IMG/VR virus record: IMGVR_UViG_3300035182_002586
Span: 248,001-312,000 of that record
Reading direction: 5' to 3' (one strand)
Length of the DNA stretch: 64,000 nt
Shown: in pieces, positions 34,455 through 63,009 of the stretch
How positions within the stretch are numbered: the first letter of the stretch is position 1
Layout: each line of letters starts with the position of its first letter
Notes under the pieces: generated by a model
Told to the model about the DNA's origin: nothing
What the model saw: only the letters and a program-made list of their open reading frames with translations
Databases searched by the model: none
Program-made: the position numbers and the translations under genes

Positions 34455-35375
34455 TCAGGCGTCCGCCGGGAAGAGTGCGGCGATCTCGCTCGCGCTCTTC
34501 GAGAGCGCCTGGAGGTCGTCCTTGAGCCACGTGTTGGCGAGATCGACGCTTGCGCAGATCTCACTGACACGGGATGCGATCTTGGTGAGGTCACCCTTCG
34601 CCTTGGCGGCGTTGAAGCGCTTGCCCGCTGCGACGAGGCGATCGATCTTCCCGTTCGTCGCATCGAGGGTGCGGAGGGTCTGATCGACGAGTGCCGTGTT
34701 CGCCTTGAAGGCGTCGAACGACATCTTCGAGGTGCTCGCCTGCTTCTTGGCCTGCTCGGCCTGCTCTTCGGCGACCTGCTGCTCGGCAGCCTGCTTCTTG
34801 GCCTGCTCTTCGGCGACCTGCTGCTCGGCAGCCTGCTTCGCCTGCTCTTCGGCGACCTGCTGCTCGGCAGCCTGCTTGGCTGCACCGAACGAGCGCTCGG
34901 CCCAGGTGGCGATGGTACCGAGCTTCTGGACCCCGCCCTTCAGCAGCGCCGTCGCTGAGGCGTTGCCCAACGACGCTTCCTTCGCATGCTGGTTGAGGAG
35001 CGCGATGTGCTGCTCCAAATGGGCCGCCCATTGCTGGAGGGCTACCTTCTTTGCCTGGTCGATGTCCGCCATGGTGCTGCCTTCCCTCGGCTGTGAGGTC
35101 CGATCCCCCTGATAGATAAGTGGATCTGTGGACGAGCCGAAACGTGTGCGGGTAGGCGCCAGAAGCGCGAAAAACCGGTCGACATCGACCCGGATTCGGG
35201 CCTTGTCGCCGGCTAGGAACGCTTCAAGGGCTCGACGAGCCTCTCCCGTCGGAGCCAGCTCTGCTACGAGCTTGGACACAGAGGTCGTGCCGAGCATGTA
35301 CTTCGTACCGTCAGGCAACAGCGCCCAATCGCGCAGCCCGTCGGTCCCAAGCAACACGTCTACGAACGTCGCCAT
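34455..35375 (-). CDS. Hypothetical coiled-coil protein with AAEQQVAEEQ repeats (possible internal start at 35072)
   Basis: 306-aa ORF; in-frame ATG 35072 has a GAGGGAAGG SD-like sequence. Confidence 0.65.
   Translation of the reverse strand: MATFVDVLLGTDGLRDWALLPDGTKYMLGTTSVSKLVAELAPTGEARRALEAFLAGDKARIRVDVDRFFALLAPTRTRFGSSTDPLIYQGDRTSQPREGSTMADIDQAKKVALQQWAAHLEQHIALLNQHAKEASLGNASATALLKGGVQKLGTIATWAERSFGAAKQAAEQQVAEEQAKQAAEQQVAEEQAKKQAAEQQVAEEQAEQAKKQASTSKMSFDAFKANTALVDQTLRTLDATNGKIDRLVAAGKRFNAAKAKGDLTKIASRVSEICASVDLANTWLKDDLQALSKSASEIAALFPADA
34760..34878 (-). repeat. Three ~39-42-bp coding tandem repeats (AAEQQVAEEQAK[K]Q)
   Basis: Repeated gcctgctcttcggcgacctgctgctcggcagcctgcttc units. 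Confidence 0.85.
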
Positions 35376-35390
35376 CCCACCGCTTGGCGG

Positions 35391-35405
35391 CCGATGAGGA
35401 GATTA
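35391..35405 (-). promoter_or_regulatory. Candidate TA-N7-TATC-class promoter (TAATCTCCTCATCGG)
   Basis: 15 nt upstream of ATG 35375; matches a motif recurring before several genes. Confidence 0.4.
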
Positions 35406-35462
35406 GCGAGGCGCACGTTCAGGTAGGAGAGGCGGTGGCGGAGCCCCTCACGTTCGTTGGGG

Positions 35463-35669
35463 TCACCAGGGGAGGTCGTCGTCCTCTTCGAGGTCGATGT
35501 GGAACTCCACGTCATCCCCTTCAACGTGAACAACAGGGGGTGGGCAAGGCAGCGTGTCGCGCACGTAACACTCGTCACAAATGGCGTCACACTCGAACGT
35601 GCCCTCGTCAATAGACACCCGAGCATGGGTGAGTAGTGACGGGTTCTGCTTGCTGGTGATCATGTTCAT
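35463..35669 (-). CDS. Small protein with SSB-like acidic C-terminus (EEDDDLPW)
   Basis: GAGGGGG SD before ATG 35669; 68 aa; CxxxCxxC cluster. Confidence 0.5.
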   Translation of the reverse strand: MNMITSKQNPSLLTHARVSIDEGTFECDAICDECYVRDTLPCPPPVVHVEGDDVEFHIDLEEDDDLPW

Positions 35670-35703
35670 GCCCCCTCTACAACACGTGTACCCTTGTGAT
35701 CCA

Positions 35704-36567
35704 TCACACCCTTAGAAAAACTTCCATGAGGTGTGACAACAAGAGGGTCGTGCCCACAGAGGGTCCAGAGAGCCAGAGCCCATCCTCCCTCCACTCCGGA
35801 GGGCCTCCGATCGATCTCTCGATCTCGTTGAGGTACGCCGCAGCCCTCGTGAGATCGAATGCTACGTGGGGACTCTTGCGTGCAGCGAGCACGCGTCGCC
35901 GCCCATCTGCATCGGGCCCCACGACGAGCCCACGGAGAAACCCACGTCGGTACAGGTCGATCCAAGCATCGGGCAGAGGCCCGCTCGCCTGAGCCACCAC
36001 GAACCCGTTGGCCCCATGGTCGAGCACACGTGGCGGAGGTGCCTCAACACCCAGGTGTGGCAGAGTCCCGTCCATGAGGTACGACCTGACCCACCCCAAA
36101 GTCGTACCCAAGCGATCAGCGACCTCCCGCTTGCTGAGGGGTGTGTCCGGAAGGACGTAGGCGCGAAGAAGTCGCAGGAAGCGCTCGACGGGGACCTCGA
36201 CATGAGCGGCGTATGCGATACCGAGGCGGTGCGTTGCGTCCACGATCGCAACGAAAGGGGCCGTGGCGGGACTGATCGCTAGGTCCCGGTGCATGAACAA
36301 CGCGACCGCCACCACCGTGTCGATGCCCGCAATCGCACGCGTCTCGAACCGTAGAGGCAGGGCTCGGCCGAGGAGGAGGTCCTCGTAGAAGCGCTGGAGA
36401 GCCCCCGGGGAAGTCGTGTCGAACCCTGCGCCGTGGTGCTCGTAGGCGAACACCGAGGGGTCCCGCGTCTGCTCCGGGCTGGCACCGGTCTCGAAGGACA
36501 CGGCGCTTGTGGACGTGACCGGCACGTCCGGGCTCACGGACATCTCGAAGACCAGCTCGTGGGGCAT
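35704..36567 (-). CDS. Hypothetical protein, possibly DHH-superfamily phosphoesterase-like
   Basis: FAYEHHG (DHH-like) and IAGIDTVVAV (DxD-like) motifs. Confidence 0.5.
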   Translation of the reverse strand: MPHELVFEMSVSPDVPVTSTSAVSFETGASPEQTRDPSVFAYEHHGAGFDTTSPGALQRFYEDLLLGRALPLRFETRAIAGIDTVVAVALFMHRDLAISPATAPFVAIVDATHRLGIAYAAHVEVPVERFLRLLRAYVLPDTPLSKREVADRLGTTLGWVRSYLMDGTLPHLGVEAPPPRVLDHGANGFVVAQASGPLPDAWIDLYRRGFLRGLVVGPDADGRRRVLAARKSPHVAFDLTRAAAYLNEIERSIGGPPEWREDGLWLSGPSVGTTLLLSHLMEVFLRV

Positions 36568-36577
36568 GAGGTGAGCC

Positions 36578-36584
36578 TACACCG
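36578..36584 (-). promoter_or_regulatory. CGGTGTA candidate promoter (TA at -12, leaderless)
   Basis: CGGTG-TAGGCT-CACCTC-ATG; no SD between the motif and the start. Confidence 0.5.
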
Positions 36585-36595
36585 TCGTTAAAGGC

Positions 36596-36623
36596 CAAGG
36601 GCCGACGATCCCGCCGGCCCTTG
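36596..36623 (-). terminator. Hairpin downstream of HU gene
   Basis: CAAGGGCCG/CGGCCCTTG 9-bp stem 21 nt after the stop; weak U-tract. Confidence 0.45.
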
Positions 36624-36644
36624 AGTCCTTCCCACCGAAGGGAC

Positions 36645-36980
36645 CTACTGAACGCCGTCCTTGAGCGCCTTGACCGGCGTGGCCTTCACCTTCGTGGAGG
36701 CCGGCTTCGCCGCGATCTTGATCGGCTGCTTCGTGAACGGGTTCACGCCGTCCCGCGCGGGAGTCGCGGCCTTGTGGACCGCCTTGAGGCGGAGCAGGCC
36801 GGGGAGGACGACGACGCCCGGGCCCTTCGGACCCAACTCGCCACGCACGATGTCGGCGATGGCCGAGAGCGTCTGCTCGATGCTCGCCTTCGAGGTGCCG
36901 AGCTTCTCGGCGATCTCGCCGACGAACGCGCTCTTGGTCATGGGCTTCTTGGTGGGCGCCTTGCTGTTCTTGCTGGCCAT
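36645..36980 (-). CDS. hup: HU-like DNA-binding protein
   Basis: MTKSAFVGEIAEK...LPGLLRLK...ARDGVNPFTKQPIKIAAKPA..VK is the HU/IHF fold signature; AGAAGGA SD before ATG 36980. Confidence 0.9.
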   Translation of the reverse strand: MASKNSKAPTKKPMTKSAFVGEIAEKLGTSKASIEQTLSAIADIVRGELGPKGPGVVVLPGLLRLKAVHKAATPARDGVNPFTKQPIKIAAKPASTKVKATPVKALKDGVQ

Positions 36981-37084
36981 TTCGGTCCTTCTGGTTGAGT
37001 GGTGAGCCTGTGGTGCTACCCGCAGGCCGGGGTTGGATGCACGACCCCTACACCACACTGAGCCGATTTGGAGGGCAAAATGCG

Positions 37085-37306
37085 TCAGTCCAGGTCGGCC
37101 CCGTTCGTCAGAGCCCACTTTTCCACAGAAAACAGGTTCACCCGCTGGATTCGCACCTGGTTCTTCGCCAGCATCCGATGCAACAGGTGCGACGCCTTCG
37201 ATGGGGTCAGACCACTCAGCTCAGCTATCTCGGCGGTCGTTCGAGCACAGTCCGGGCGCAAGCAGGTCCGCACGAACGTCGTGATGTCTGCCTCCGTTTC
37301 CTGCAT
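37085..37306 (-). CDS. Small winged-helix DNA-binding protein
   Basis: TTAEIAELSGLTPSKASHLLHRM..KNQVRI; AAGGA SD. Confidence 0.55.
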   Translation of the reverse strand: MQETEADITTFVRTCLRPDCARTTAEIAELSGLTPSKASHLLHRMLAKNQVRIQRVNLFSVEKWALTNGADLD

Positions 37307-37392
37307 GGTTCACGTTCCTTGGAGCGGGTACACTTTCACCTGCCGGGTGGTTCCAGCACTCCTACTACCGCGCCAAGGGGGGCCGATCCATC

Positions 37393-37399
37393 CGGTGTA
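37393..37399 (+). promoter_or_regulatory. CGGTGTA candidate promoter
   Basis: Upstream of ATG 37414 and followed by a GAGGTGAGG SD. Confidence 0.4.
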
Positions 37400-37413
37400 T
37401 CGAGGTGAGGGCG

Positions 37414-37611
37414 ATGGCGATTCGGAAACCGCTCAAGAAAGGCGAGGACGTGGAGATCGTCCCCACAGGCCAGAAGTACGTCGTGCTCGCCGATCAGGAT
37501 GGGGATCAGATCCGCTGCAAGCCCAAGGAGGGTGGGGTCGAGATCGTCCTGCACCTACGGGCCATCCGTCGTGTGCGCACACGCGCAACGACCGTCATGA
37601 TCAAGAGGTAG
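37414..37611 (+). CDS. Small SH3/KOW-like hypothetical protein
   Basis: LKKGEDVEIVPTGQKYVVL is a beta-barrel-like pattern; good SD. Confidence 0.55.
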   Translation: MAIRKPLKKGEDVEIVPTGQKYVVLADQDGDQIRCKPKEGGVEIVLHLRAIRRVRTRATTVMIKR

Positions 37612-37613
37612 CT

Positions 37614-37973: not shown

Positions 37974-37980
37974 CCCCCCT

Positions 37981-37987
37981 CGGTGTA
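37981..37987 (+). promoter_or_regulatory. CGGTGTA candidate promoter
   Basis: TA at -13 relative to ATG 37999. Confidence 0.45.
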
Positions 37988-37998
37988 AGAGGGGGGTC

Positions 37999-39696
37999 AT
38001 GGAAGCAACCAAGAAATCCCGTCGTCCCCGATGGTCGGTCGTTCTAGGTACCGTCGCGGGAGTGGTCGCCGTTGCTCTTGTCGTGGCCTGGTTCGTCGCA
38101 CCTGTGATGGTGCGACGCTACGTGGAGCAGCACTACAAGGGGGTCCACATCCAAGGCGGGGTGACCCTATCGTTCCGTGGTGTCGCACTCCACGGGGTCG
38201 AGATCGACAGGGAGGGGGTCAAAGCACAGCTACCCCTCGTGCGTGTGCTCCCGGATGAGAGCGTCGTCGTAGAGGGCGGGACGGCTACCCTCACCCTGAC
38301 GGAAAAGCCAGGGGGCGGTAACAGCGACACGAAGAGACGGGTCGTGGGGTGGTTGGATGCGGCCACGGTCGTGCAGGGGGACGTCAAGGGGACTGCCACG
38401 AAGGTCACGTTCGACGACTTTCGCGTCTGCGCCGAGAAGGTGGAGGCGCAGCACCCAAAGGGTTCGGTGTCTGGTGCCACCGTCTGCGTGAGGAAAGACC
38501 GCACGCTCGTCACGGCCGAGGCGCTGACGGCCACACCGAGCTTCAAGCTCCCCTACATCGACAAGCTGCCGGCCCCGACCCCCAAGGACATCACCGTCAC
38601 TGGCGTCGAGTTCAAACCGAAAGAGCCGAGCGTATCGGTCAAGACGGCCACCTTTGGGCCGGTGTCGGTCAAGTCCGGGTACGCAGCGATCAAGTCCGCG
38701 ACCGTGTATCTCATGGGGGACGTGACTCTGGACCTGGCGGTTCTGCACACGGGGCCGATCACGTTGAAGGACGTGAGCACCAAGATCCCTGTGGCGGATC
38801 TGGCGAACCTGACGAAGATCCCGGTTCAGATCGGCCCCGCTCGGGTGGTGATCAGCCCGGGGGACATGTCCCTCGAAGGGGATGCGAAGTGCCAGGCGTG
38901 GGTCGATGCGTTGCCCACGGAGCTGCGTACGGGCCCCCTTGCCACGATGCGCCTGGAGGGGTCCTTGTCCTTCACAGTCGCCGTGAAGCCCCCCACGCCC
39001 ACGTTCAAGATGAAGGCGGACTGCCACGCCTCGTGTGAGGGGTTCAAGCCTCTGTCGGGGAAGTTCACCTACACGGCCTACGATGCTGACGGAAAGGAGT
39101 TCGTGCGCACGACGGGTCCGGGCACGAAGGACTGGACCCCGATCGGCGAAGTGAGCGCCACGCTTCCGGCCGCCGTGATGTCGACGGAAGACCCCGGGTT
39201 CCTCGGGCACAAGGGGGTCATCCCCGAGGCCATCGAGAACTCGCTGCGGGACGACCTCAAGGCCGACCGCTTCGTGCGCGGGGGCTCCACCATCACGATG
39301 CAGCTCGTGAAGAACGTCTGGCTCCGACGGACCAAGACGCTTGGACGCAAGACCCAAGAGGTCCTGCTGTCGCTCGCGATCGAGTCGTGTCTGTCGAAAG
39401 ACGTGATCATGGAGACGTACCTGAACGTCGTCGAGTTCGGCCCCAATCTCTACGGGGTGGGGCCCGCGTCGCAGCACTACTTCGGAGAAGCTGCGATGAC
39501 TCTCGACCCTGTGCGGTCGTACTACCTGGCTTCGATCCTCCCCGCCCCTCGAAAGGCTCCGCCCCCGAACACCGAGACCTTGGAGCGCATTCGCTCGCTG
39601 ATGATCCGTGTGTCGAAAGAGAGTGGACAGCTCTCGGACACGTTCGGAGCACCTAGCCCTCAGGACGAAGAGGGGTGGGTCGTCAACAAGCCGTAG
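37999..39696 (+). CDS. Membrane-anchored peptidoglycan glycosyltransferase (GT51, monofunctional)
   Basis: N-terminal basic stretch plus TM helix; C-terminal EDPGFLGHKG, RGGSTITMQLVKN, RKTQE and YLNVVEFG GT51 motifs; no transpeptidase domain. Confidence 0.9.
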   Translation: MEATKKSRRPRWSVVLGTVAGVVAVALVVAWFVAPVMVRRYVEQHYKGVHIQGGVTLSFRGVALHGVEIDREGVKAQLPLVRVLPDESVVVEGGTATLTLTEKPGGGNSDTKRRVVGWLDAATVVQGDVKGTATKVTFDDFRVCAEKVEAQHPKGSVSGATVCVRKDRTLVTAEALTATPSFKLPYIDKLPAPTPKDITVTGVEFKPKEPSVSVKTATFGPVSVKSGYAAIKSATVYLMGDVTLDLAVLHTGPITLKDVSTKIPVADLANLTKIPVQIGPARVVISPGDMSLEGDAKCQAWVDALPTELRTGPLATMRLEGSLSFTVAVKPPTPTFKMKADCHASCEGFKPLSGKFTYTAYDADGKEFVRTTGPGTKDWTPIGEVSATLPAAVMSTEDPGFLGHKGVIPEAIENSLRDDLKADRFVRGGSTITMQLVKNVWLRRTKTLGRKTQEVLLSLAIESCLSKDVIMETYLNVVEFGPNLYGVGPASQHYFGEAAMTLDPVRSYYLASILPAPRKAPPPNTETLERIRSLMIRVSKESGQLSDTFGAPSPQDEEGWVVNKP

Positions 39697-40618: not shown

Positions 40619-40625
40619 GCTGACG

Positions 40626-40662: not shown

Positions 40663-41049
40663 ATGTCGAACGTCAACACGGATCAGATCGCAGAACAGCT
40701 CGGCCAGCTCTCCGTCATGGAGCTGATTGGCCTCACAAAGAAGCTGGAGACCGCCTGGGGCGTTTCGGCGGCGCCTGCCGTCAACCTGGCCCCGCCGACC
40801 CCGTTGCCGGGCACCCCGGTCGTCGCAGAGCAGACGGAGTTCGAGGTCGCCCTCACGGGCCTCGCCGCCCCGGACAAGAAGATCTCGGTCATCAAGGTCA
40901 TCCGGGAAGTCACGGGCCTCGGCCTCAAGGAGGCGAAGGACCTCGTGGAAGCCCTCCCGAAGACCGTGAAGGAAGGCATCGCGAAGGCGGAGGCGGAAGA
41001 CCTCACGAAGAAGCTGCGTGAGGCCGGCGCCACGGTCGAGATGAAGTGA
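40663..41049 (+). CDS. rplL: 50S ribosomal protein L7/L12 (full length)
   Basis: [25 protein letters not shown] and [34 protein letters not shown]...AE.L.KKL.EAGA.VE.K; GGAGG SD. Confidence 0.97.
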
Positions 41050-41089: not shown

Positions 41090-42043
41090 ATGACGGACAT
41101 CAAACACGCAGTCTCCATCGACCAGTTCGACAACCCCTCGATCGAGAGGTTGTTCCTACGAGCCAGGACTCTTCGGGACGCCGACGTGCAGGCGAGCAGC
41201 CTCGCGGGCAAGGTCCTCGCCTGCCTCTTCTACGAGCCCTCGACCCGCACCTCGTCCAGCTTCATCGCTGCGATGACTCGGGCCGGGGGCTCGGTCATTC
41301 CGATCACTCAAGGGGTGCAGTTCTCCAGCGTCTCGAAGGGCGAGACGCTGGAAGACACGATCGTCACCCTCGGTCAGTACGCCGATGCGATCGTTCTTCG
41401 TCACCCGGAGGTGGGCGCAGCCGCACGGGCGGCCGCTGTCTCCCCGGTCCCGGTCATCAACGCCGGAGACGGTGCCGGAGAACACCCGACGCAGGCGCTC
41501 CTGGACCTCTTCACAATCCAAGAGGAGTGTGGCGGCCGCCTCGACGAGCTGAACGTGACGTTCGTGGGCGACCTTGCGCACGGCCGTACGGTGCACTCGC
41601 TGGCGAAGCTCCTCGCACGGCACAACACGAAGATCAACCTCGTCTCCCCCTTCCTTCTCCGCCTCAACCGGATCGGGGATGACGACCCTACCTACCGGGC
41701 CGTCAAGCATCGGATCGGACGGGAGCGCACCGTCAAGAACGGGCTCCACGAGGCGCAGGACATCCTGAACGATTCGGATGTCATCTACATGACGAGGGTG
41801 CAGAGGGAGCGCTTCACGTACGCGGAAGGGTACGCGGAGGTGAAGGACTCCTGCCTGCTCACGGACGAGATCGTCGCGGGGCTGAAACCTCGTGCGCGCA
41901 TCCTCCACCCGTTCCCGCGCGTGAACGAGATCCCGACCACCATCGACAAGGACCCTCGCGCGGCCTACTTCCGGCAGATTCGCAACGGGCTGTGGGTCCG
42001 GATGGCCCTTCTCGAAAGCGTCATCCTCGGGAGGACGCCGTGA
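41090..42043 (+). CDS. pyrB: Aspartate carbamoyltransferase catalytic subunit
   Basis: FYEPSTRT carbamoyl-phosphate site, SSVSKGETLEDT, NAGDG..EHPTQALLD, VGDL.HGRTVHSL, YMTRVQRER and LHPFPRVNEI. Confidence 0.95.
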   Translation: MTDIKHAVSIDQFDNPSIERLFLRARTLRDADVQASSLAGKVLACLFYEPSTRTSSSFIAAMTRAGGSVIPITQGVQFSSVSKGETLEDTIVTLGQYADAIVLRHPEVGAAARAAAVSPVPVINAGDGAGEHPTQALLDLFTIQEECGGRLDELNVTFVGDLAHGRTVHSLAKLLARHNTKINLVSPFLLRLNRIGDDDPTYRAVKHRIGRERTVKNGLHEAQDILNDSDVIYMTRVQRERFTYAEGYAEVKDSCLLTDEIVAGLKPRARILHPFPRVNEIPTTIDKDPRAAYFRQIRNGLWVRMALLESVILGRTP

Positions 42044-42100: not shown

Positions 42101-42931
42101 ATGGCGCTCACGAGTCACATCTACGCCCTCGTTCACCCTATATCTGGTGAGATCCGCTACGTTGGGAAGTGTGTGACGTCGCTCAAGAGACGACTTCACA
42201 ACCACGAGTACCGAGCACGTAGTGGTCGCGACAAAACCCCCAAAGGGGAGTGGATCCGGCAGCTACACCTGAGGGGGTTACACCCCCTCACCCGGCCACT
42301 CGAAGTAACCACAGAGCTTCGATGGCAGGACGCCGAACGACGGTGGATCGCCAAACTACGAGCAGAGGGACACCCGCTTCTGAACTTGCACGCTGGCGGC
42401 AACGGGGCTCACACACGTGCTGCCCTCGCCCCGCAGTATGCAAGCCTTCTCGGAACGATCTCCGACGCTCGAATCGCGGAAATGGCTGGATTGTGTCGAG
42501 AGACGGTAACGTACCACAGAAGAAGGGCTGGTATCCACGCCTCCAACGATCGCAGTCGGGTCAAGTGCACCTTCCAGAAGGGGGCACCCCCTCCTAACAA
42601 GATCGAGATCCCGTCTGCCCTGCTCGGTCAACTGGGAAAGCTGAGTGACGGGGAACTGGCCAAAACCTGCGGTGTGTCGCGAGGGCTGATTAAGCAGCGC
42701 AGAAAGAAAGCCGGGATCGCCCCTGCTCTCCCGAAAGGCAAAACGCCACATGGGACAGACCACCCCAACGCAAAGTTGACTGAGGAAGTCGTCCGTCAGA
42801 TTCGAGCAAGATACAAGCGATACAGCCGGACAGATGGGTGTGGAGTGATGGCCAAGGAACTGGGGATCGATCGCTCCACCGTGCACGACGTGGTGACGGG
42901 TAAGATATGGAGGGTAAGATATGGAGGGTAA
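42101..42931 (+). CDS. GIY-YIG homing endonuclease with repeated HTH modules
   Basis: HIYALVHP..GEIRYVGK motif; two LLG..SD..IA...G HTH repeats; C-terminal HPNAKLTEE.VR.IR. Confidence 0.85.
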   Translation: MALTSHIYALVHPISGEIRYVGKCVTSLKRRLHNHEYRARSGRDKTPKGEWIRQLHLRGLHPLTRPLEVTTELRWQDAERRWIAKLRAEGHPLLNLHAGGNGAHTRAALAPQYASLLGTISDARIAEMAGLCRETVTYHRRRAGIHASNDRSRVKCTFQKGAPPPNKIEIPSALLGQLGKLSDGELAKTCGVSRGLIKQRRKKAGIAPALPKGKTPHGTDHPNAKLTEEVVRQIRARYKRYSRTDGCGVMAKELGIDRSTVHDVVTGKIWRVRYGG

Positions 42932-42944
42932 GATATGGAGGGTA
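42898..42944 (+). repeat. 3 x 14-bp tandem repeat GGGTAAGATATGGA
   Basis: Units at 42898, 42912 and 42926, plus a partial GGGTA. Confidence 0.95.
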
Positions 42945-45489: not shown

Positions 45490-45993
45490 TCAGTTCCGCT
45501 TCTTCTTCCCCTCGGGGGCCTTGGCCTTCACGGGCTCTGCCTCCGGGGCGGCTTCGACGACGGGCTCTGCCTCCGCCGGTGCGGGCTCCTCCGCCGGTGC
45601 GGGCTCGGGAGCGGGTTCCTCCGCCTTCACGGGCTCGGGAGCGGGTTCCTCCGCCTTCACGGGCTCGGGAGCGGGCTCGGGAGCGGGCTCGGGAGCGGGC
45701 TCGGGAGCGGGCTCGGGAGCGGGCTCGGGCTCGGGCTTGGGGGCAGGGGCCTTCACGGGCTCGGGAGCGGGCTTGGGGGCACGGGGTGCTGCCTTCGGTG
45801 CAGCCCGTAGCGCTTCCGCCTGTGCGATGAGCGCGAGGAGCCCGTCGATCGACACATCGATCATCCCCGAGGCACCCACCTCCGAGGCGAGCTGCTTCGC
45901 GTACTCCTTTGCGTGGCCGACCTGAAAGCCGTGGGTACGAGCGTACAGGCAGCGAGCCTTGAGTGCAGCGAGTTCGTGGCTGTCCATCGACAT
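45490..45993 (-). CDS. Pro/Glu/Ala-rich (PEPA repeat) protein
   Basis: GAGGAG SD; short helical N-terminus, (PEPA)n linker and basic KKKRN C-terminus. Confidence 0.7.
   Translation of the reverse strand: MSMDSHELAALKARCLYARTHGFQVGHAKEYAKQLASEVGASGMIDVSIDGLLALIAQAEALRAAPKAAPRAPKPAPEPVKAPAPKPEPEPAPEPAPEPAPEPAPEPAPEPVKAEEPAPEPVKAEEPAPEPAPAEEPAPAEAEPVVEAAPEAEPVKAKAPEGKKKRN
45545..45775 (-). repeat. 12-bp coding repeat (gcgggctcggga; PEPA) and longer AEEPAPEP duplications
   Basis: Directly visible tandem units. Confidence 0.9.
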
Positions 45994-47018: not shown

Positions 47019-47087
47019 GAGGGTCATTGAAACCCAATAGAGGGTCATTGAAACCCAATAGAGGGTCATTGAAACCCAATAGAGGGT
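47019..47087. repeat. 3 x 21-bp tandem repeat GAGGGTCATTGAAACCCAATA (iteron-like)
   Basis: Identical units at 47019, 47040 and 47061, plus GAGGGT; located in the ~500-bp divergent intergenic region. Confidence 0.95.
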
Positions 47088-49567: not shown

Positions 49568-50089
49568 ATGCCCGAGATCTTCCGCACACGGGACGTGATC
49601 GTCTTCGCCAAGACCCATGCGATCCCGGTGGCCGTCTCCACAACGTTGAAGACCGGCGGTTGGACCGGCGGCCAGGGTGTGCAGTGGGCAGACGTTCCCG
49701 GCGTCGACCAGTTCCTCGTCACCTACTCGGACGGCCCCTACGGCGGGTTCCTTCTGTGGGGGTCGGACGAACCCGCCGACCAGTACGTGTCGTACGTCGA
49801 GAACCAGCCAACCTACGGCTTCGCCGTCCTCTGCACGGGGAACTGGCTCATCGCAACGTCCACCTTCGAGCGCTACACGTACGCGTCACGCACTGGAGGG
49901 GGCCCCCTCGTCCCTCTCGTGTACGCCCCTGGTGATGCTCTCCGGTTCAGCCTTCGGGGCTTCTTCACGAAGGAAGACGAGTGGACTCTCTCGGCGGACC
50001 CACGGGCACCGAACCGCTACATCGTGGGGCGCGTCGCGCAACCCAACACGCTCAACCCGACGTTCCTCTCGGTTCAGACGATCTTGTAG
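49568..50089 (+). CDS. Probable virion structural (head decoration-like) protein
   Basis: Beta/Gly-rich 173 aa; preceded by the putative late motif. Confidence 0.5.
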   Translation: MPEIFRTRDVIVFAKTHAIPVAVSTTLKTGGWTGGQGVQWADVPGVDQFLVTYSDGPYGGFLLWGSDEPADQYVSYVENQPTYGFAVLCTGNWLIATSTFERYTYASRTGGGPLVPLVYAPGDALRFSLRGFFTKEDEWTLSADPRAPNRYIVGRVAQPNTLNPTFLSVQTIL

Positions 50090-50902: not shown

Positions 50903-51119
50903 GGGTCCTCACCCGTGTGAGGAGACAAGAGATTCCTCGACAACTTTGCTGGGGGTCATCTTCGTGTCACGGCAGAGGATAGGTCAGGCCAAGCTCACCG
51001 CCGAAGGGGCGGGGACACCAGCCTTCTGGAGGCCCTGTCCTACCTAGCGAATTTCGCGGGCAAGTACGGCCACGGTTCGCGATAGCGCTGCGGTAACGCT
51101 CTTGTGCGCGGGCGTAGGT

Positions 51120-52052
51120 ATGCCCACCCCGTCCGCGCTCGTCTCGCGCGTCGCCCACCGTTACGCGCTCGTCTCGCGCGTCGCCCACCGGTTTGCAGCC
51201 TCCCACGAGGTCTTCGCGAGCAAGGCCCTGGCGCGTTCCTGGCCAGAGTTGGTCAGCATGGTCGAGAAGGATGCGCAGGCCGTGGGGCACTGGCGTAAGA
51301 AGTTCGTCTCGGAGTCCTTGGCCATTCTCAAGAAGGGCCGGGCCGATAGCGAGGCCATGGTCAAGGGGCCGTGGTGGGAGCGCTATCCGGACGCCGTGAA
51401 AGGGAACTTGAAGGACATCGAGTTCGTGTTCTCGACGGTCGAGAAGAACGTCAAGAAGCTCGAAACGAAGATGATCGACGAGCCTCTGGCGGGGCACGAG
51501 GTCAGCCAGATCCACATGGACCACTGGGACCCCGAGATGTTCGCAGACGGTCAGACGAAGGCTGACTACGGCCGCAAGCCCATCGACCCGATCTTCGAGG
51601 CCGTGCAAGCGGTCACCACGAAGTACCACGAGTTCTGGAAGCGCTTCAACGCGAAGTACGACCTCGGGAGCCTGAACGTCACCCTCTATGGCCTTCTCCC
51701 CGCCAGCTTGAACAAGAAGAGCCGCCTGAACTTCGAGCTGATCCAGAAGCTCGACGGGGAGGACCTGGAGAAGGCCCTCCACTGGTACAGCGGCGAGCTG
51801 GAGAAGCTCGCGAAGGAAGTCGAGAAAGAAGGTCCTCCCGGTGCCGCGAACGCGCTGTCCGTCGGTGCCGGCCTCTCGGCCCTCATGGGCGAGGCCAAGA
51901 AGAAGGGCGATCAGTGGACCGCCGACTTCGCCAAGTCCCTGATGGGCCAGGCCGAAAGAAGGCACCCGTTCTCCGACAAGCAGCGGAGCCTGCTCGATGC
52001 GAAGCTGCACGAGTACCACGTGCCACCCGTCAACTACACGATCTGGTGGTGA
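51120..52052 (+). CDS. Hypothetical protein with duplicated ALVSRVAHR[YF] N-terminus
   Basis: AGGT SD before ATG 51120; 30-bp tandem duplication at about 51134-51190. Confidence 0.7.
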   Translation: MPTPSALVSRVAHRYALVSRVAHRFAASHEVFASKALARSWPELVSMVEKDAQAVGHWRKKFVSESLAILKKGRADSEAMVKGPWWERYPDAVKGNLKDIEFVFSTVEKNVKKLETKMIDEPLAGHEVSQIHMDHWDPEMFADGQTKADYGRKPIDPIFEAVQAVTTKYHEFWKRFNAKYDLGSLNVTLYGLLPASLNKKSRLNFELIQKLDGEDLEKALHWYSGELEKLAKEVEKEGPPGAANALSVGAGLSALMGEAKKKGDQWTADFAKSLMGQAERRHPFSDKQRSLLDAKLHEYHVPPVNYTIWW

Positions 52053-52056: not shown

Positions 52057-52770
52057 ATGGCATTCCTCGGCCTCCGCGTTCCTCTCGAAACCGCCCGCCT
52101 CTTGTCCGAGGTGCCGGACGTCGCCAAGTACGGTGATCCGGAGCCGCTCGATCGGTTCCACGTGACCCTGCTCGTCCTCGGGGACATCCCCATCGAGGAC
52201 GTAGCGCGCACTATCGAACCTGTCTTCAAGGTTGTCTCCGAGACCCGGCCCTTCACGGTCTCGACGTCACACATCACGACGTTCCCGCCCGGTGAGACGA
52301 CCCCGATCATCGGGCTCATCGACTCTCCCGAGATCCACGTCCTCAGGGCCCGCCTCACCGAGGCGCTCGGGGAAGCCGACATCGAGTACAACCGCAAGTT
52401 CAAGGACTACGTACCCCACGTCACGCTTGGGTACTCCGCCCCCGACCTGCACTACGATGGTGGGATCAACGTGCACCTCCCCGTCCCGATCTCGTGGGGC
52501 GCTCACGAGCTGGTGCTGTGGGGTGGGCACGTCGACGATCAGGTCATGACCCGGGTGATCGTGACCTTCCCGTTCTCGCTCGGTCTTCCTCGTCCGGGAG
52601 ACGAACCGGAGCAAGAGAAGGCGGAAGAGCCGGAGAAGGTCAAGGACAGCATCCGCTACAAGGCTGCCGTGCGTCTCGCGATGCACGAGGGGCAGACCGG
52701 GTGGCCCTCACGCTCTAGTACGGCGAGTCGTGTGCTCAAGCGCTACCTCGGAGCCGTTCGAGGAGGCTGA
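52057..52770 (+). CDS. 2H phosphoesterase, Acb1/T4 gp57B-like
   Basis: Two H-x-T-h motifs (FHVTLL and PHVTLGY) in a context PEPLDRFHVT...KFKDYVPHVTLGY resembling Acb1 (PVPREKIHST...DFDDYTPHITLSY, recalled from memory). Confidence 0.75.
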   Translation: MAFLGLRVPLETARLLSEVPDVAKYGDPEPLDRFHVTLLVLGDIPIEDVARTIEPVFKVVSETRPFTVSTSHITTFPPGETTPIIGLIDSPEIHVLRARLTEALGEADIEYNRKFKDYVPHVTLGYSAPDLHYDGGINVHLPVPISWGAHELVLWGGHVDDQVMTRVIVTFPFSLGLPRPGDEPEQEKAEEPEKVKDSIRYKAAVRLAMHEGQTGWPSRSSTASRVLKRYLGAVRGG

Positions 52771-54226: not shown

Positions 54227-54457
54227 ATGCCCGCTGCGAAGAAGACCACCGCCAAGAAGACCACCGCCAAGAAGACCACCGCCAAGAAGGCCCCCGCGAA
54301 GAAGGCCGCCCGCAAGACCACCGCGAAGAAGGCCCCCGCGCGCAAGACCGCGGCCAAGAAGGCGCCGGCCAAGAAGGCCGCGCGCAAGCCCGCCGCCAAG
54401 AAGGCCGCGCGCAAGCCCGCCGCCAAGAAGACGGTCGTGGCGCCCCCGGCGATCTGA
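54227..54457 (+). CDS. Histone H1-like Lys/Ala-rich DNA-binding protein
   Basis: (A/T)AKK and PAKKAARK repeats across 76 aa; AAGGAG SD; own terminator. Confidence 0.85.
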   Translation: MPAAKKTTAKKTTAKKTTAKKAPAKKAARKTTAKKAPARKTAAKKAPAKKAARKPAAKKAARKPAAKKTVVAPPAI

Positions 54458-58089: not shown

Positions 58090-58134
58090 GCGGGGCCCGG
58101 ATGGATCATCCCCGCGTCACGAGGTAGTAGGGTC

Positions 58135-58665: not shown

Positions 58666-58666
58666 C

Positions 58667-59068: not shown

Positions 59069-59138
59069 CGCTCCTCGTCACGGACGCCAACGAAGGCATC
59101 ATCCGTGGACCTCAGGGCGTTGCCCGGAGGAATCACGG

Positions 59139-59456: not shown

Positions 59457-59556
59457 TAGGGAGAGGTGGGCTAGCGCTGCTGTCGCGCCAGATCCTTTCA
59501 CTTCCGCGCTCTTACAAGAGCTGGACTTCGCAGCTCAGACACAGGAGCGAGGATCG

Positions 59557-59904
59557 GTGGCGACCCGTAAGAAGACAGCCGCAACCGAGAAGGCCAAACC
59601 GAAGGCGAAAGCCAAGGCCAAGCCGAAAGTGGAGGCTCCGCCCCCGCCCGAGAAGACGCGCGACCTGATCCAGGTGTGGCTCGTGGCGCTCAAGCGTGAG
59701 CACTACGATGATGTGCCTCTGGACTGGCCCGAGCAGCTCATCTCGCCCATCCCCACGGTGGTCCTCCGTCCCCGTCCGAAGCAACAGCAGGTGTTGCCCC
59801 GGCCCGTGAGCGTTGAAGTTCTCGGGCCGGAGTCACAGATGCCGGAGCTGCGCTCCCGTCTTGGGAGCAAGTTCCAGGTCACCGTGGTGTCGGACGGAAC
59901 GTGA
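59557..59904 (+). CDS. Hypothetical protein with Lys/Ala-rich N-terminus
   Basis: GAGGA SD before GTG 59557. Confidence 0.55.
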   Translation: MATRKKTAATEKAKPKAKAKAKPKVEAPPPPEKTRDLIQVWLVALKREHYDDVPLDWPEQLISPIPTVVLRPRPKQQQVLPRPVSVEVLGPESQMPELRSRLGSKFQVTVVSDGT

Positions 59905-59936
59905 CAAGACGGAGGGTACGCCCTACCCTCTCGGCC

Positions 59937-60119
59937 ATGAGCGACGACGCGATGATCATCCTCGTGGCCGTGGGGTTCATCGTGTTCGTCACCCTTCTTG
60001 TGGTGATCCTTCGACGCGGCGATTCGGGCTCCGGGTGGTCCTCCGGCAGCTCAGGAGATCACGTCGGAGACAGCGTAGATCTCGTGGGAGATCTGATCGA
60101 CGTTTTCCTCGACGACTAG
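59937..60119 (+). CDS. Small single-pass membrane protein
   Basis: IILVAVGFIVFVTLLVVIL TM helix followed by RR, a GS linker and an acidic amphipathic tail. Confidence 0.55.
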   Translation: MSDDAMIILVAVGFIVFVTLLVVILRRGDSGSGWSSGSSGDHVGDSVDLVGDLIDVFLDD

Positions 60120-60123
60120 CTCG

Positions 60124-60894
60124 TCACACCTCTGCGTAGACGATGCAGTCCTGGTTCCAGAGGAGCCCCTCGCAGTGCACCTTGTCGGGCGGCTGGATGA
60201 TACAGACCCCGCCCTCTCCGAAGTTGTTGTTCGCCTCGCGACCGTAGCGGTTCGAGACGACGAGGGTGCAGCGGTTGCTCTCCACGAAGTCCATCCAAGC
60301 GGTCGCGGGGAAGCCCCCGTCACCGAAGTTGGCGCTGAACGCCACGATGTCGGCGTCACCCCTCTCGTAGAGGGAGGTCCACTTGTCGTTGACCCGATCC
60401 CGGATGTCACGGCAGATGAGTAGTCCGACCTTCTTCTCGACCCCACCGAGGTCGAGGGTAGCGACCGGGGGGTTGGCCCTGCCCGGTTTGGCCCAACAGT
60501 GATCCTGGCCCCAACGGTTAATTTTTCGGTACGAGTACATCTCCCCCGTGGGGGTCACGAGAGCCTGTGCATTGTAGAGGTCACCGTTACCTACGTCGAC
60601 TTCCACGAGACCCCACGCAATGTGGACTCCAAGATTTCGGGCCAGCTTGGACATCACGAGAACGCTGTCCCCGCCTTCGAACTCGTCCGCGCCAAAGTGC
60701 GCAATGGGTTCGGCGAACGGCCGAGCCTCAGCGGGCGACATCATCGAGTAGCCGGTCGTGCACAGCTCAGGGAGGACGACGAGCTTCGCTCCGCCCGCCG
60801 CAGCCTCCGTAACAAGGGAAGCCAGACGGCGAAGGTTCTCCATCTTCTGACCGTACTTGGCGGCGAATTGGACGGCAGCGACGCGCACCTTCAT
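60124..60894 (-). CDS. Carbon-nitrogen hydrolase (nitrilase superfamily)
   Basis: VAAVQF, LVVLPEL (Glu), YRKIN (Lys) and GLLICRD (Cys) give an intact E-K-C triad. Confidence 0.9.
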   Translation of the reverse strand: MKVRVAAVQFAAKYGQKMENLRRLASLVTEAAAGGAKLVVLPELCTTGYSMMSPAEARPFAEPIAHFGADEFEGGDSVLVMSKLARNLGVHIAWGLVEVDVGNGDLYNAQALVTPTGEMYSYRKINRWGQDHCWAKPGRANPPVATLDLGGVEKKVGLLICRDIRDRVNDKWTSLYERGDADIVAFSANFGDGGFPATAWMDFVESNRCTLVVSNRYGREANNNFGEGGVCIIQPPDKVHCEGLLWNQDCIVYAEV

Positions 60895-60896
60895 AC

Positions 60897-61280
60897 CTAC
60901 CCCCCTCTGATAGAAGAGTTCTTCGTGTGCTCTGCGATCAGAGCACACCACCGTGTGAACTCAGACACAGGGAGTGCGTTGCGCATCAAGTTCACCACCT
61001 TGTGGACCCACTGAACGTTCCCAGGCACGTAGCCTTTCGTGTTGTCAACACGGTCTAGGGATGCAGTCGTCCGTGAGTTCCTCCCCGCCTCAAATATAAG
61101 AGGCTCTCCCGAGATCGCGCACTTGCGTTCCTGCCTCTCGAACAGGCTCCACGCGTGCTCCATGGTGAGGTTGAACTCAATACCCCTACGAGCAGCCCCT
61201 TCGATGTACCCCGTCCAAAAGCTCGCTCGTATCTCTTTGAACCCCTTGAAGGTAGCTGTGGGAGAAGGCGCCGAGGACAC
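60897..61280 (-). CDS. Small HNH-like endonuclease
   Basis: AARRGIEFNLT...CAISG...SLDRVDNTKGYVPGNVQWVHKVVNLMRN; same family as 19032-19400; overlaps the 3' end of the upstream gene. Confidence 0.75.
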   Translation of the reverse strand: MSSAPSPTATFKGFKEIRASFWTGYIEGAARRGIEFNLTMEHAWSLFERQERKCAISGEPLIFEAGRNSRTTASLDRVDNTKGYVPGNVQWVHKVVNLMRNALPVSEFTRWCALIAEHTKNSSIRGG

Positions 61281-63009
61281 CGAGGGCGAGGGAGAAGCGG
61301 GGGGCCGCTGCCGTCTTCGACGTGGGCCCGAGCGTTGCGTTCAGCTCCTCGTGGAGGGCGTCGAACATGTTGTAGTGCGCCTTGGGCGAGCCCTTGCGGC
61401 TGACGAACTCCCGCACCTCGCTCGCCGAAGGCTTTCGACCGCCCTGCCACTCGGCGAGGAGACGCTCGCAGAGAGCGCGGTCACCGGGGGCATCCGCGTC
61501 GAAGCGCCGGAACGTCTCCGCAACGTTGAACCCGAGGTCGTGACTCATGCGCTCGACGACCTTCAAGCCCACCTTCTCGACCCGCACGCTGTGGAGATCG
61601 TCGACTGCATCGATCAGGATGGTGACGAGCTTCGGGTTGTGCATCTCGATGAGCCGGCCGAGGTCCTGAATCGCCTTGCCGCCCTTCTCTTCGGGCAGGA
61701 TGAGGCTGTCGTCGGCAGCCTGGTAGACGGCAGCCTGGAACCCGGCCTCGTCCTTGATCATCACCTGGAAAGCCAGGGAGGCGACCTTCAACATCGGCTT
61801 CCAGTGGCCCTGTCGAACGTCATGCACGAACTCGACGACGTTCGCGGCCGCGCGTGCGCGCGCATCGGGGTTCGACCGGAGATCCGCCTCGGGGAAGAAG
61901 GTGGTCACGTCGAACGTGTCGGCCGGGTACTTCGCTGGGTTCGCGATGATGCGCTCCACGAGGCCCCGGTCCATCACCCCGACCTCGTACTCTTTCAACC
62001 GGGTGGCGTACGCATCCCTCAGAGCCCCGATGCCGGCCTCCATCACGAAGGACAGGTACTCGTAGCTGGAGAGCGTCGTGAGCACGTCGTGGTACTTCTC
62101 GCGCAGGTTCGTCTTGAGGCGCTCCACGTGCCCGTGCGCGGCCGAGACGAGCCCCGTTCGGTAGTGCGCCAGGTCATCGTAGATGCGGATGATCACGTCG
62201 TTGGGCGCGCGGCCCTGGAAGACCTTCCCGAGCTGTGACTTGAGCGTCTGGAGCTGCTCCGCCTTGCCCTTGTTGCCGCGCTTCGTGAGGATCCCCTGCA
62301 CGATCTCCATGACCCCCGTGTTGTCGGAGGAGGGGAGCTTCAACCGGGTCGCGAGCTGACGGATCTCGATGCAGGCGTTGACGGCCTTCATCGCATCGGA
62401 GCGCGCTGCGGAGTCGATCTTCAACGCGTTCAGGACTCGAACGCCGTTGTTGACCTCGACCATGTGCTTGAAGATGTGGAAGTCCCCGCCCGTGCCGGCG
62501 GCGTGGACCATCGCACGAAGGGAGGCTTCGAGGTCCGCCAGCTCGGAGGACTCGACGATCTCGCCGCCCTTCTGGACCCCCTCCTGCCGCCGCTTGAGGA
62601 TCTTGATCTCGTTGGAGATCAGCGAGCGGAGGCGCTCCACGTCGGTCTTGTAGTGGATGTTGAGGAAGTTGACGATGCACTCGGAGCCGATGTGGAGCGT
62701 CCGCTTCCGGATCTTGTTCTGGATCGGGAAGTTCCAGGCGATGGGCTCTTTCCCGCACAGCTCACAGTGCGAGTGGGGGGCCCAGTAGGGGGCCCCCTTC
62801 CTCGCCCACTCCTTGATCGCCGTGGCGAGATCCTGGCTGGAAGACTCGGAGAGGAGCTTCGCGCGGATGCGCTGCCAGTAGGCGTCCCCTGTCCCGGCCG
62901 GGCGTAGGTGGGCGTCGTCCAGCTCTTCGAGAGCCCGCTCGTACTCAGGGAGGTCGTGGACCGTCCCGTGGAGCGGACCCTGGCCTTCGGCGGCGTAGAA
63001 GAGGAACAT
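61186..63009 (-). CDS. Hypothetical helical protein with CxxC...HxxxxC Zn site
   Basis: HCELCGK...HIGSEC; 607 aa; KTAA motif near the C-terminus. Confidence 0.65.
   Translation of the reverse strand: MFLFYAAEGQGPLHGTVHDLPEYERALEELDDAHLRPAGTGDAYWQRIRAKLLSESSSQDLATAIKEWARKGAPYWAPHSHCELCGKEPIAWNFPIQNKIRKRTLHIGSECIVNFLNIHYKTDVERLRSLISNEIKILKRRQEGVQKGGEIVESSELADLEASLRAMVHAAGTGGDFHIFKHMVEVNNGVRVLNALKIDSAARSDAMKAVNACIEIRQLATRLKLPSSDNTGVMEIVQGILTKRGNKGKAEQLQTLKSQLGKVFQGRAPNDVIIRIYDDLAHYRTGLVSAAHGHVERLKTNLREKYHDVLTTLSSYEYLSFVMEAGIGALRDAYATRLKEYEVGVMDRGLVERIIANPAKYPADTFDVTTFFPEADLRSNPDARARAAANVVEFVHDVRQGHWKPMLKVASLAFQVMIKDEAGFQAAVYQAADDSLILPEEKGGKAIQDLGRLIEMHNPKLVTILIDAVDDLHSVRVEKVGLKVVERMSHDLGFNVAETFRRFDADAPGDRALCERLLAEWQGGRKPSASEVREFVSRKGSPKAHYNMFDALHEELNATLGPTSKTAAAPRFSLALGVLGAFSHSYLQGVQRDTSELLDGVHRRGCS

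What the first reader, a model, noticed from the sequence alone, without database searches (positions are those of the whole stretch)
34455..63009. Recurring R/K-[VIT]-A-x-(R-F/Y) motif on unrelated proteins: candidate capsid-packaging or maturation tag
Examples near protein termini or domain boundaries: ALVSRVAHRY-ALVSRVAHRFAAS (51120, a perfect 30-bp duplication), STASRVLKRYLG (C-terminus of the 2H protein, 52057), PRWKIAS (40217), TKIASRV (34455), MRRIAAG (52775) and TSKTAAAPRF (61186). Several of these genes (35375, 40217, 63009, loosely 51120) also carry the TA-N7-TATC motif. Large phages process and package internal head proteins via short motifs, so this may mark an injected cargo set. 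The matches are short and some may be chance.
Basis: inference. Interest (0 to 1): 0.6.

Follow-up and report, generated by a model that had tools for sequence, protein, structure and literature searches.

The report
Shared docking tag on huge-phage proteins
About twenty unrelated proteins of this 529-kb phage, and their relatives across a worldwide clade of huge phages, carry the same short helical tag at an end; it most likely loads them into the phage head for injection with the DNA, but that is not proven.

Summary
Read literally, [RK][VIT]A.R[FY] occurs 13 times in the 689 predicted proteins of this 528,957-bp phage. Residue shuffles give 1.2 and reversed or scrambled motifs give 2. Ten of the 13 lie within 45 residues of a terminus.

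The consensus is [ST]-[LI]-A-x-R-V-[ALV]-x-[RK]-[FY]-[LQ]. It is selected at protein level and sits on flexible extensions outside the catalytic domains. About 22 proteins carry it: topoisomerase IB (both ends), a 2H phosphoesterase, a HAD phosphatase, four zincin-like metallopeptidases, a large head-operon protein and many unknowns.

In the window, only the 51120 gene (two tandem copies, a real 30-bp duplication) and the 52057 gene (C-terminus) carry it. The other four examples lack the core.

The tag is enriched in four related phage records (GC 0.37-0.60). It is absent from a cultured jumbo phage whose capsid protein is 49% identical.

Tagged genes cluster around the portal and capsid genes. 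In one relative, tag and topoisomerase sit in a 2108-residue protein inside the head operon.

Best reading (about 0.5): a head-loading tag for injected enzymes. Binding and cleavage are untested.

The parts
51120..52052 (+). Gene for a 310-aa all-alpha protein of unknown fold, carrying two tandem N-terminal tags
   Evidence: Gene call. The AF2 model has residues 1-33 helical but at pLDDT below 50 and detached, and the rest above 80. No PDB fold match and no Pfam or PHROG family. Nine of ten homologues keep one N-terminal tag.
51135..51164 (+). Tag copy 1 (residues 6-15, core R-V-A-H-R-Y)
   Evidence: Part of the perfect 30-bp-period tandem repeat at 51134-51190.
51165..51194 (+). Tag copy 2 (residues 16-25, core R-V-A-H-R-F)
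   Evidence: The duplication is crossed without gaps by contigs of runs X1, X3 and X4. Homologues elsewhere have a single copy, so the duplication is recent.
51100..51106 (+). Core TCTTGTG of the promoter-like motif class C, 14-20 nt upstream of the ATG
   Evidence: The class is found before 6 of 22 tagged genes against 19 of 667 others (Fisher p 6e-5).
52057..52770 (+). Gene for a 237-aa 2H (LigT-like) phosphoesterase with a C-terminal tag
   Evidence: Pfam 2_5_RNA_ligase2 E 1.8e-15 and LigT_PEase E 2.6e-11, covering residues 14-156. The tag lies beyond the domain. The syntenic orthologue in L021 also ends in a tag.
52717..52749 (+). C-terminal tag (residues 221-231, core R-V-L-K-R-Y at 52729-52746)
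   Evidence: matrix score 30.8 bits; none at or above that in 5 shuffled proteomes.

Best explanation
The feature is a modular docking tag of about 12 residues that probably forms a helix. Its consensus is [ST]-[LI]-A-x-R-V-[A/L/V]-x-[R/K]-[F/Y]-[L/Q]. It is attached by flexible linkers to the N-terminus, the C-terminus or both ends of unrelated phage proteins, sometimes in two copies.

Shown: the tag is real, selected at protein level, terminal, outside the catalytic domains, and conserved across a clade of huge phages that share a nearly invariant HK97-type capsid protein.

Inferred:
- The tag binds a conserved component of the assembling head (capsid protein interior, scaffold or portal).
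- Tagged proteins are thereby enclosed in the procapsid and leave with the DNA at infection.
- The cargo (topoisomerase IB, 2H phosphoesterase, HAD phosphatase, zincin-like peptidases, small unknown proteins) then acts before any phage gene is expressed.

On this reading the tag does non-covalently what fusion to MuF or portal domains does in phage polyvalent proteins, and what the capsid targeting sequence does for T4 internal proteins. Copies at both ends and tandem copies would add avidity for a repetitive lattice.
For: 1. Enrichment and position.
2. Protein-level selection: all synonymous codons are used at R, V, A and R. The tag persists from GC 0.37 to 0.64.
3. Outside the domains: the Pfam domains end before or start after the tags in TopoIB, 2H and HAD. 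Both AF2 models put the tags in detached low-confidence helices.
4. Unrelated carriers: all-against-all BLAST finds no similarity apart from one short local match between two of the zincin-like proteins (they align as a distant family).
5. Clade-wide: 9 of 10 homologues of the 51120 protein keep the tag. Of 120 TopoIB homologues, 103 have a tag on the N side, 52 at the C-terminus and 7 have none. It is enriched in G001, G002, G003, G004 and L021. It is absent from the cultured Tunturi_5, whose MCP is 49% identical.
6. Head linkage: 9 of 22 tagged genes lie in the portal block or the MCP-protease block, which hold 51 of 689 genes (p 8e-6; portal; MCP and protease).
7. Head operon of G001: the order is portal, a 988-aa tagged protein, an 88-aa tagged protein, protease, scaffold, MCP.
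8. Fusion: in G004 a 2108-aa ORF directly upstream of the protease carries an N-terminal tag, a TopoIB domain (Pfam E 3.8e-28), a conserved linker module and a second tag. The same module plus tag forms the N-terminus of the G000 1403-aa and G001 988-aa head-operon proteins.
9. Cargo type: all four proteins with the HE-x-GH zincin signature are tagged. Their weak profile and fold matches all go to Zn metalloproteases of the lethal-factor/PPEP type. Zincin peptidases and 2H domains are typical of head-packaged polyvalent proteins (PMC5512222).
10. Promoter-like motif C is shared with head- and tail-region genes and a GH25 lysin gene.
11. The MCP is the most conserved protein by far: 95% between G000 and G001, against a median of 47%. 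That fits a receptor for an invariant tag.
Against: - No direct evidence of binding or of virion content.
- The single complex prediction (MCP with the tagged N-terminus) gave no verdict.
- No common protease site follows the tags, unlike T4.
- The prohead protease has its own, different conserved C-terminal motif, so at least one head-internal protein does not use this tag.
- Thirteen of 22 tagged genes lie outside the head blocks, and those blocks were delimited after seeing the data.
- Calling motif C 'late' is an inference.
- RNA-repair-type enzymes could equally act in the cytoplasm.
- No cultured member of the tagged clade was found, so there is no proteome to consult.
Confidence: 0.5

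Rival explanations
1. The tag is a short linear motif that docks the proteins on some other hub. Candidates are a replication or repair factory, a phage cytoskeletal filament (the genome has a conserved actin-like protein), a chaperonin, or a host protein. It would work as clamp-binding or PIP-box motifs do on DNA enzymes.
For: Terminal, linker-separated and position-independent motifs on nucleic-acid enzymes (TopoIB, 2H, HAD) are typical of hub-binding motifs. Thirteen of 22 tagged genes lie outside the head blocks. The phage encodes well-conserved non-head proteins that could serve as hubs.
Against: No polymerase, helicase or ligase is among the tagged set. The tag shares nothing with the known clamp-binding consensus sequences (own knowledge). 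The fusion of tag and TopoIB into a head-operon protein and the clustering at the portal and MCP are not explained.
Confidence: 0.25
2. The tag is a recognition element for a protease. It could be a processing signal for the tagged zincin peptidases or the prohead protease in polyproteins, or a degron that times the removal of these proteins.
For: In the large head-operon proteins the tags sit at domain boundaries: G000 1403 aa at residues 58 and 1134, and G004 2108 aa after the TopoIB domain. A whole family of zincin peptidases travels with the tag. Polyvalent proteins are thought to be processed by their own zincins (PMC5512222). Known degrons sit at either terminus (own knowledge).
Against: Most tags are 3-9 residues from the very N-terminus or 9-30 from the C-terminus, where cutting would release nothing. 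No conserved scissile-site pattern flanks them. Tandem and double-ended copies are unusual for degrons.
Confidence: 0.12
3. The tag is an amphipathic membrane-binding helix that brings the proteins to the cell membrane or to a lipid compartment.
For: Its hydrophobic positions (-3, -2, +1, +2, +5, +6) fall on one face of a helix and are flanked by arginines. Such helices occur at either terminus (own knowledge).
Against: Membrane-targeting helices conserve a pattern, not an identity. Here R, V, R and F/Y are conserved at 75-98% across a GC range of 0.37-0.64. The helix is short and rich in Ala.
Confidence: 0.05
4. There is no functional tag. The matches are chance in an Ala/Arg/Val-rich proteome, or the by-product of a DNA or RNA element at gene starts.
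For: The loose tripeptide is not enriched.
Against: z is 11 against shuffles, and reversed or scrambled controls give 2 against 13. Synonymous codons vary freely and C-terminal copies exist. The tag is conserved in orthologues at 34-59% identity and across GC 0.37-0.64. A natural proteome of similar GC has none.
Confidence: 0.02

Closest known systems
Capsid targeting sequence (CTS) of phage T4 internal proteins (IPI-III, Alt)
   Same: A short conserved peptide is the only thing shared by a diverse set of defence-countering proteins. It loads them into the prohead so that they are injected with the DNA, and foreign proteins can be loaded with it (PMC3012670).
   Different: - The CTS is strictly N-terminal and is cut off by the gp21 protease at a Glu site (own knowledge). 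Here tags are N-terminal, C-terminal, internal or doubled, with no common cleavage site.
- The sequences are unrelated.
- The capsid protein here is HK97-type (phrog_2522), not gp23-type.
Encapsulin cargo-loading (targeting) peptides
   Same: Short conserved peptides sit on flexible linkers at the C- or N-terminus of unrelated enzymes and bind the inside of an HK97-fold shell. Some cargos repeat the motif between domains and at the very C-terminus (PMC8346489).
   Different: - Different consensus (for example TVGSL or GPTGLGT types).
- Encapsulins are DNA-free cell compartments, whereas this is a tailed phage with portal, scaffold and protease.
- Binding to the shell is not shown here.
Phage polyvalent proteins and MuF- or portal-fused effectors
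   Same: The same kind of cargo (zincin-like peptidases, 2H phosphoesterases and other early-acting enzymes) is encoded among head genes and predicted to be packaged and injected (PMC5512222). The G004 2108-aa head-operon protein looks like one.
   Different: There the domains are covalently joined to one another or to MuF or portal domains. Here most are separate small proteins that share only a peptide tag. No MuF domain was detected, apart from weak structural leads.
Coat-binding C-terminal helices of phage scaffolding proteins, and the C-terminal tail of the HK97 prohead protease
   Same: Short terminal helical or basic segments that dock a protein to the capsid interior during assembly (own knowledge).
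   Different: Those act for one dedicated assembly protein each. Here the scaffold (Q-rich, 503 aa) and the protease have other conserved C-termini, and the tag is spread over about 20 proteins.
Bacterial microcompartment encapsulation peptides
   Same: Amphipathic helices at the N- or C-terminus, joined by linkers, that target unrelated enzymes into a protein shell (own knowledge).
   Different: They conserve a hydrophobic pattern rather than residues, the shell fold is unrelated, and no such shell genes were seen here.

Membership tests
T4-type capsid targeting sequence | Located only at the extreme N-terminus of the cargo | tested here: not met
   About 13 proteins carry it N-terminally, but about 6 carry it C-terminally and about 5 internally. 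Two proteins carry it at both ends.
T4-type capsid targeting sequence | Followed by a prohead-protease site (Leu/Ile-x-Glu) and removed at maturation | tested here: not met
   No common residue pattern at positions +6 to +11 beyond L/Q and A. Actual cleavage cannot be tested here.
T4-type capsid targeting sequence | T4-type head genes (gp23 capsid protein, gp21 protease) | tested here: inconclusive
   Pfam Gp23 and Peptidase_S77 were not found, but the control genomes did not ring either. The MCP matches HK97-type phrog_2522.
T4-type capsid targeting sequence | Sufficient to load a foreign protein into heads | not testable with these tools
   Needs an expression experiment.
Encapsulin cargo-loading peptide | The shell protein has the HK97 fold | tested here: met
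   phrog_2522 major head protein E 3.9e-53, weak Pfam Phage_capsid. Sources name homologues as HK97 family.
Encapsulin cargo-loading peptide | Short conserved terminal peptide on a flexible linker, on unrelated cargo | tested here: met
Encapsulin cargo-loading peptide | Known consensus (Gly/Ser/Leu-rich motifs) | tested here: not met
   The consensus here is Arg-Val-Ala-x-Arg-Phe/Tyr; compare PMC8346489.
Encapsulin cargo-loading peptide | The peptide binds the luminal face of the shell protein | tested here: inconclusive
   The complex prediction gave no verdict.
Encapsulin cargo-loading peptide | The shell lacks portal, tail and packaged genome | tested here: not met
   Portal, protease, scaffold, baseplate and tail genes are present.
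Phage polyvalent protein / MuF-fused effector | Several effector domains in one polypeptide, or fusion to a MuF or portal domain | tested here: not met
   Not met for the window genes or for most tagged genes, which are single-domain proteins. Met only by the G004 2108-aa protein. No MuF Pfam hit.
Phage polyvalent protein / MuF-fused effector | Effector repertoire with zincin peptidase, 2H and similar domains, encoded among head genes | tested here: met
   with PMC5512222.
Clamp-binding / PIP-box type hub motif | Gln-based consensus, and replisome enzymes as carriers | tested here: not met
   No Gln in the core. No polymerase, helicase or ligase among the carriers with a Pfam family. The consensus of the known motifs is from my own knowledge.

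The most novel reading that the evidence does not exclude
A globally distributed clade of huge phages (contigs up to about 620 kb, capsid protein 81-96% identical) uses one portable peptide tag of about 12 residues to load a changeable set of separate enzymes into the capsid. The tag would then define each phage's injected protein set from sequence alone. It would replace the covalent polyvalent-protein strategy with non-covalent docking, and would give a natural cargo-loading tag for very large capsids.
Probability: 0.4. Interest if true: 0.8.

Novelty: new variant of a known kind. Interest (0 to 1): 0.72.

Why it matters
Huge phages are known almost only from metagenomes, and most of their genes have no assigned role.

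- A tag readable from sequence would mark a functional class (probably the proteins delivered with the DNA). That would assign a role to about 3% of the genes of each such phage.
- It would single out the enzymes that act first against host defences.
- It would explain why the capsid protein is nearly frozen while the rest of the genome diverges.
- It gives a simple experiment: fuse the tag to a reporter and test loading.
- If it works, it is a cargo-loading handle for very large capsids.

Even if the partner is not the head, the tag reveals a hub-and-spoke protein network shared by the whole clade.

Tried and rejected
- Complex prediction of the capsid protein (alignment A2) with residues 1-42 of the 51120 protein returned 'no answer', score 0.00. 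It is evidence neither way, and no further job was available.
- Fold search of the 310-aa protein against PDB found no match. Pfam and PHROGs give nothing for it or for most tagged proteins.
- Relatives of the 51120 protein: none in IMG/VR other than the window's own record and only two short metagenome loci. The 129-kb record behind L021 is not held for whole-record search, and the ENA contigs had no DNA on hand.
- Nucleotide search of the window against phage records found no match.
- Pfam Gp23, Peptidase_S77 and Terminase_6C were not found in the genome. For the first two the control genomes were silent too, so nothing follows.
- Literature searches for the motif strings, and for huge phages with topoisomerase IB or targeting signals, found nothing relevant.
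- A DNA-level explanation was rejected because of free synonymous variation.
- The ThyX-like instance (residue 83, inside the Thy1 domain and outside the window) is probably not a tag.
- The capsid protein's own C-terminal R-x4-R-F was considered as a tag copy and rejected, because the spacing is one residue longer.
- The 590-aa ORF g_85097 was a gene-calling error. Its first 280 codons lack coding signal, so the tag there is N-terminal.
- Phage G was scanned only over its 25-kb head region, with no convincing tag. It was not tested genome-wide.


Full report
**What the window is.** The window is bases 248,001-312,000 of a single 528,957-bp contig with GC 0.64. It is an IMG/VR virus record rated complete.
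- It carries an array of 55 tRNA genes, including one with anticodon TTA, and a tmRNA.
- The first 35 kb of the window hold baseplate and tail genes.
- Elsewhere in the genome are a portal, an HK97-type major capsid protein (MCP), a head maturation protease and a Gln-rich scaffold-like protein.
- It is therefore a huge contractile-tailed phage.
- I called 689 genes with a simple codon-usage caller.

**Checking the observation.** All six strings exist.
- The 30-bp tandem duplication in the 51120 gene is perfect over 57 nt.
- Contigs of other sequencing runs cross it without gaps, including a diverged strain from a groundwater study.
- Taken literally, [RK][VIT]A.R[FY] occurs 13 times in the proteome. 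Residue shuffles give 1.23 +/- 1.03. Ten hits lie within 45 residues of a terminus, against 0.37 expected.
- Reversed and scrambled motifs occur twice.
- The five non-coding frames together hold 14 relaxed matches against 25 in the coding frame.
- The prefix [RK][VIT]A alone is not enriched.
- So the core is real and the halo around it is chance.

**Anatomy.** A position matrix finds about 22 carriers.
- Thirteen carry the tag 3-9 residues after the initiator Met. This includes g_85097, whose true start is an internal Met.
- About six carry it 9-30 residues from the C-terminus.
- TopoIB and a 435-aa peptidase-like protein carry it at both ends. The 51120 protein carries two tandem copies.
- The consensus from more than 160 instances is [ST]-[LI]-A-x-R-V-[ALV]-A/x-[RK]-[FY]-[LQK]. 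R, V, R and F/Y are each at 75-98%.
- Every synonymous codon is used at the conserved residues, so selection acts on the peptide.
- Where a Pfam domain is known, the tag lies outside it: TopoIB 47-245 of 295, 2H 14-156 of 237, HAD 7-118 of 151.
- Two AF2 models place the tags in detached, low-confidence helices.
- The carriers are unrelated by BLAST, except for one family of zincin-like peptidases that only an alignment reveals.

**Who carries it.**
- Topoisomerase IB, a LigT-like 2H phosphoesterase and a HAD phosphatase of the RNA-repair type.
- All four proteins in the genome with an HE-x-GH signature. Their profile and fold matches are weak, but all go to zinc metalloproteases of the lethal-factor/PPEP kind.
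- A 1403-aa protein of the head operon.
- A dozen proteins without any family.

**Beyond this genome.**
- Nine of ten homologues of the 51120 protein (34-59% identity) keep one N-terminal tag while the flanks diverge.
- In the syntenic contig L021, the orthologue keeps an N-terminal tag, the 2H orthologue keeps a C-terminal tag, and an extra 597-aa protein has one at each end.
- Of the 120 closest TopoIB homologues, many on contigs of 200-570 kb, 103 have a tag N-terminal to the domain, 52 have one at the C-terminus and 7 have none.
- I fetched four related IMG/VR records whole: G001 (350 kb, GC 0.60), G002 (128 kb), G003 (102 kb, GC 0.37) and G004 (36 kb). G002 is nearly the same phage as G001. 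The tag is enriched in each.
- These phages share an MCP that is 81-95% identical, while the median protein identity between G000 and G001 is 47%. More than 2000 database proteins belong to this MCP family, the listed top 120 at 84-96% identity.
- The cultured Tunturiibacter phage Tunturi_5 (GC 0.58, MCP 49% identical) has no strict match and no terminal relaxed match. It serves as a natural negative control.

**Link to the head.**
- In G000 the portal block (48-69 kb) holds five tagged genes and the MCP-protease block (335-354 kb) holds four. That is 9 of 22 tagged genes against 51 of 689 genes overall (p 8e-6). I drew the blocks after seeing the data.
- In G001 the two blocks form one operon: portal, a 988-aa tagged protein, an 88-aa tagged protein, protease, scaffold, a 209-aa protein (probably a decoration protein by position, compare phage G) and MCP.
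- In G004 the gene before the protease is a 2108-aa ORF. It carries an N-terminal tag, a TopoIB domain, a conserved Lys/Pro-rich module, an acidic linker and a second tag.
- In G003 a separate TopoIB with the same module and tag sits two genes before the protease.
- The same module plus tag opens the 1403-aa and 988-aa head-operon proteins of G000 and G001.
- This fusion and fission ties the most consistently tagged enzyme to the head operon.

**Co-regulation.**
- Three promoter-like motifs recur at fixed distances from start codons.
- Class C is an A/T-rich patch followed by TCTT[AG]T[CG].
- It precedes 6 of 22 tagged genes against 19 of 667 others (p 6e-5). A seventh appears once the g_85097 start is corrected.
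- It also precedes the head-operon 1403-aa gene, several genes of the tail region and a GH25 lysin gene.
- That class C is a late promoter is my inference.

**Mechanism.** I think the tag most likely docks its carriers to a conserved part of the assembling head, so that they are enclosed and later injected.
- Known parallels are the T4 capsid targeting sequence (PMC3012670), encapsulin targeting peptides at either terminus and sometimes repeated (PMC8346489), and head-packaged polyvalent proteins rich in zincin and 2H domains (PMC5512222).
- Shown: a real, modular, conserved tag; the kinds of proteins that carry it; its genomic association with head genes.
- Inferred: the binding partner, enclosure and injection.
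- Against: no binding or virion data, no verdict from the complex prediction, no cleavage motif, and a protease that uses a different C-terminal motif.
- I put this reading at about 0.5. Docking to another hub is about 0.25, a protease or degron signal about 0.12, a membrane helix about 0.05 and chance about 0.02.

**Novelty.** Targeting peptides for protein shells are a known kind. This sequence, its use at either end and in multiple copies, and its spread over a clade of uncultured huge phages did not turn up in the searchable literature. I file it as a new variant of a known kind, conditional on the partner being the head.

Noticed in passing
whole genome; in the window e.g. upstream of 37414, 37999, 41090, 47831: Two further promoter-like motifs sit at fixed distances from start codons. 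CGGTGTA has 114 sites, 73 of them at -20 to -10. GATGGAT has 54 sites, 40 of them at -40 to -30. No tagged gene has the first and only one has the second.
   Followed up: partly
window 42898-42944 and 47019-47087: Perfect intergenic tandem repeats: 14 bp x 3.4 copies and 21 bp x 3.3 copies, both at 100% match. Function unknown.
   Followed up: no
window 40663-41049, 36645-36980, 41090-42043, 37999-39696: The phage encodes ribosomal protein bL12 (both Pfam domains), an HU-type DNA-binding protein, an aspartate/ornithine carbamoyltransferase and a protein with a peptidoglycan transglycosylase domain.
   Followed up: partly
genome 123-176 kb (outside the window): An array of 55 tRNA genes, including one with anticodon TTA (it would read UAA), plus a tmRNA with tag peptide ANDNGTVITALKAAA. 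Coding density under table 11 is 87%, so no recoding was assumed.
   Followed up: no
genome 343027-343959 (L025:8030-8959, minus strand): The major capsid protein is far more conserved than anything else: 95% identity to G001 against a median of 47%, with the next full-length proteins near 70%. The annotated start is probably about 18 codons too early, since homologues are 291-293 aa.
   Followed up: partly
L063:1854-8177 (relative G004): A 2108-aa ORF in the head operon contains a topoisomerase IB domain (residues 413-608) between two tags, followed by about 1400 residues with no match. It looks like a polyvalent head protein.
   Followed up: partly
window 54227-54457: A 76-aa protein made almost entirely of Lys/Ala/Thr repeats (15-bp period, 9 copies). 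It is conserved in position in L021 and may be a histone-H1-like DNA binder.
   Followed up: no
window 34750-34877 and 45581-45777: In-frame tandem repeats inside genes: 39 bp x 3.2 in the 34455-35375 gene, and 30- and 12-bp repeats (Pro/Ala/Glu-rich) in the 45490-45993 gene.
   Followed up: no
window 49568-50089; genome 59836-60885; G001 202592-204171: A family of about 173-aa paralogues with a conserved N-terminal M-P-E-I-x-R-x-R-D lies next to the portal in G000 and G001, and just upstream of the tagged 51120 gene in the window. It has no Pfam or PHROG family.
   Followed up: no
genome 346326-347993 and G001/G003/G004 orthologues: The prohead protease ends in its own conserved motif (A-L-L-x-K-G-x-L-F-x-L-G). 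This may be a separate head-targeting signal.
   Followed up: no
genome 85097-86869: The long ORF here is a gene-calling artefact. Its first 280 codons have the composition of an antisense frame. The real gene starts at the internal Met and has the tag at its N-terminus, with two class C promoter-like cores just upstream.
   Followed up: yes
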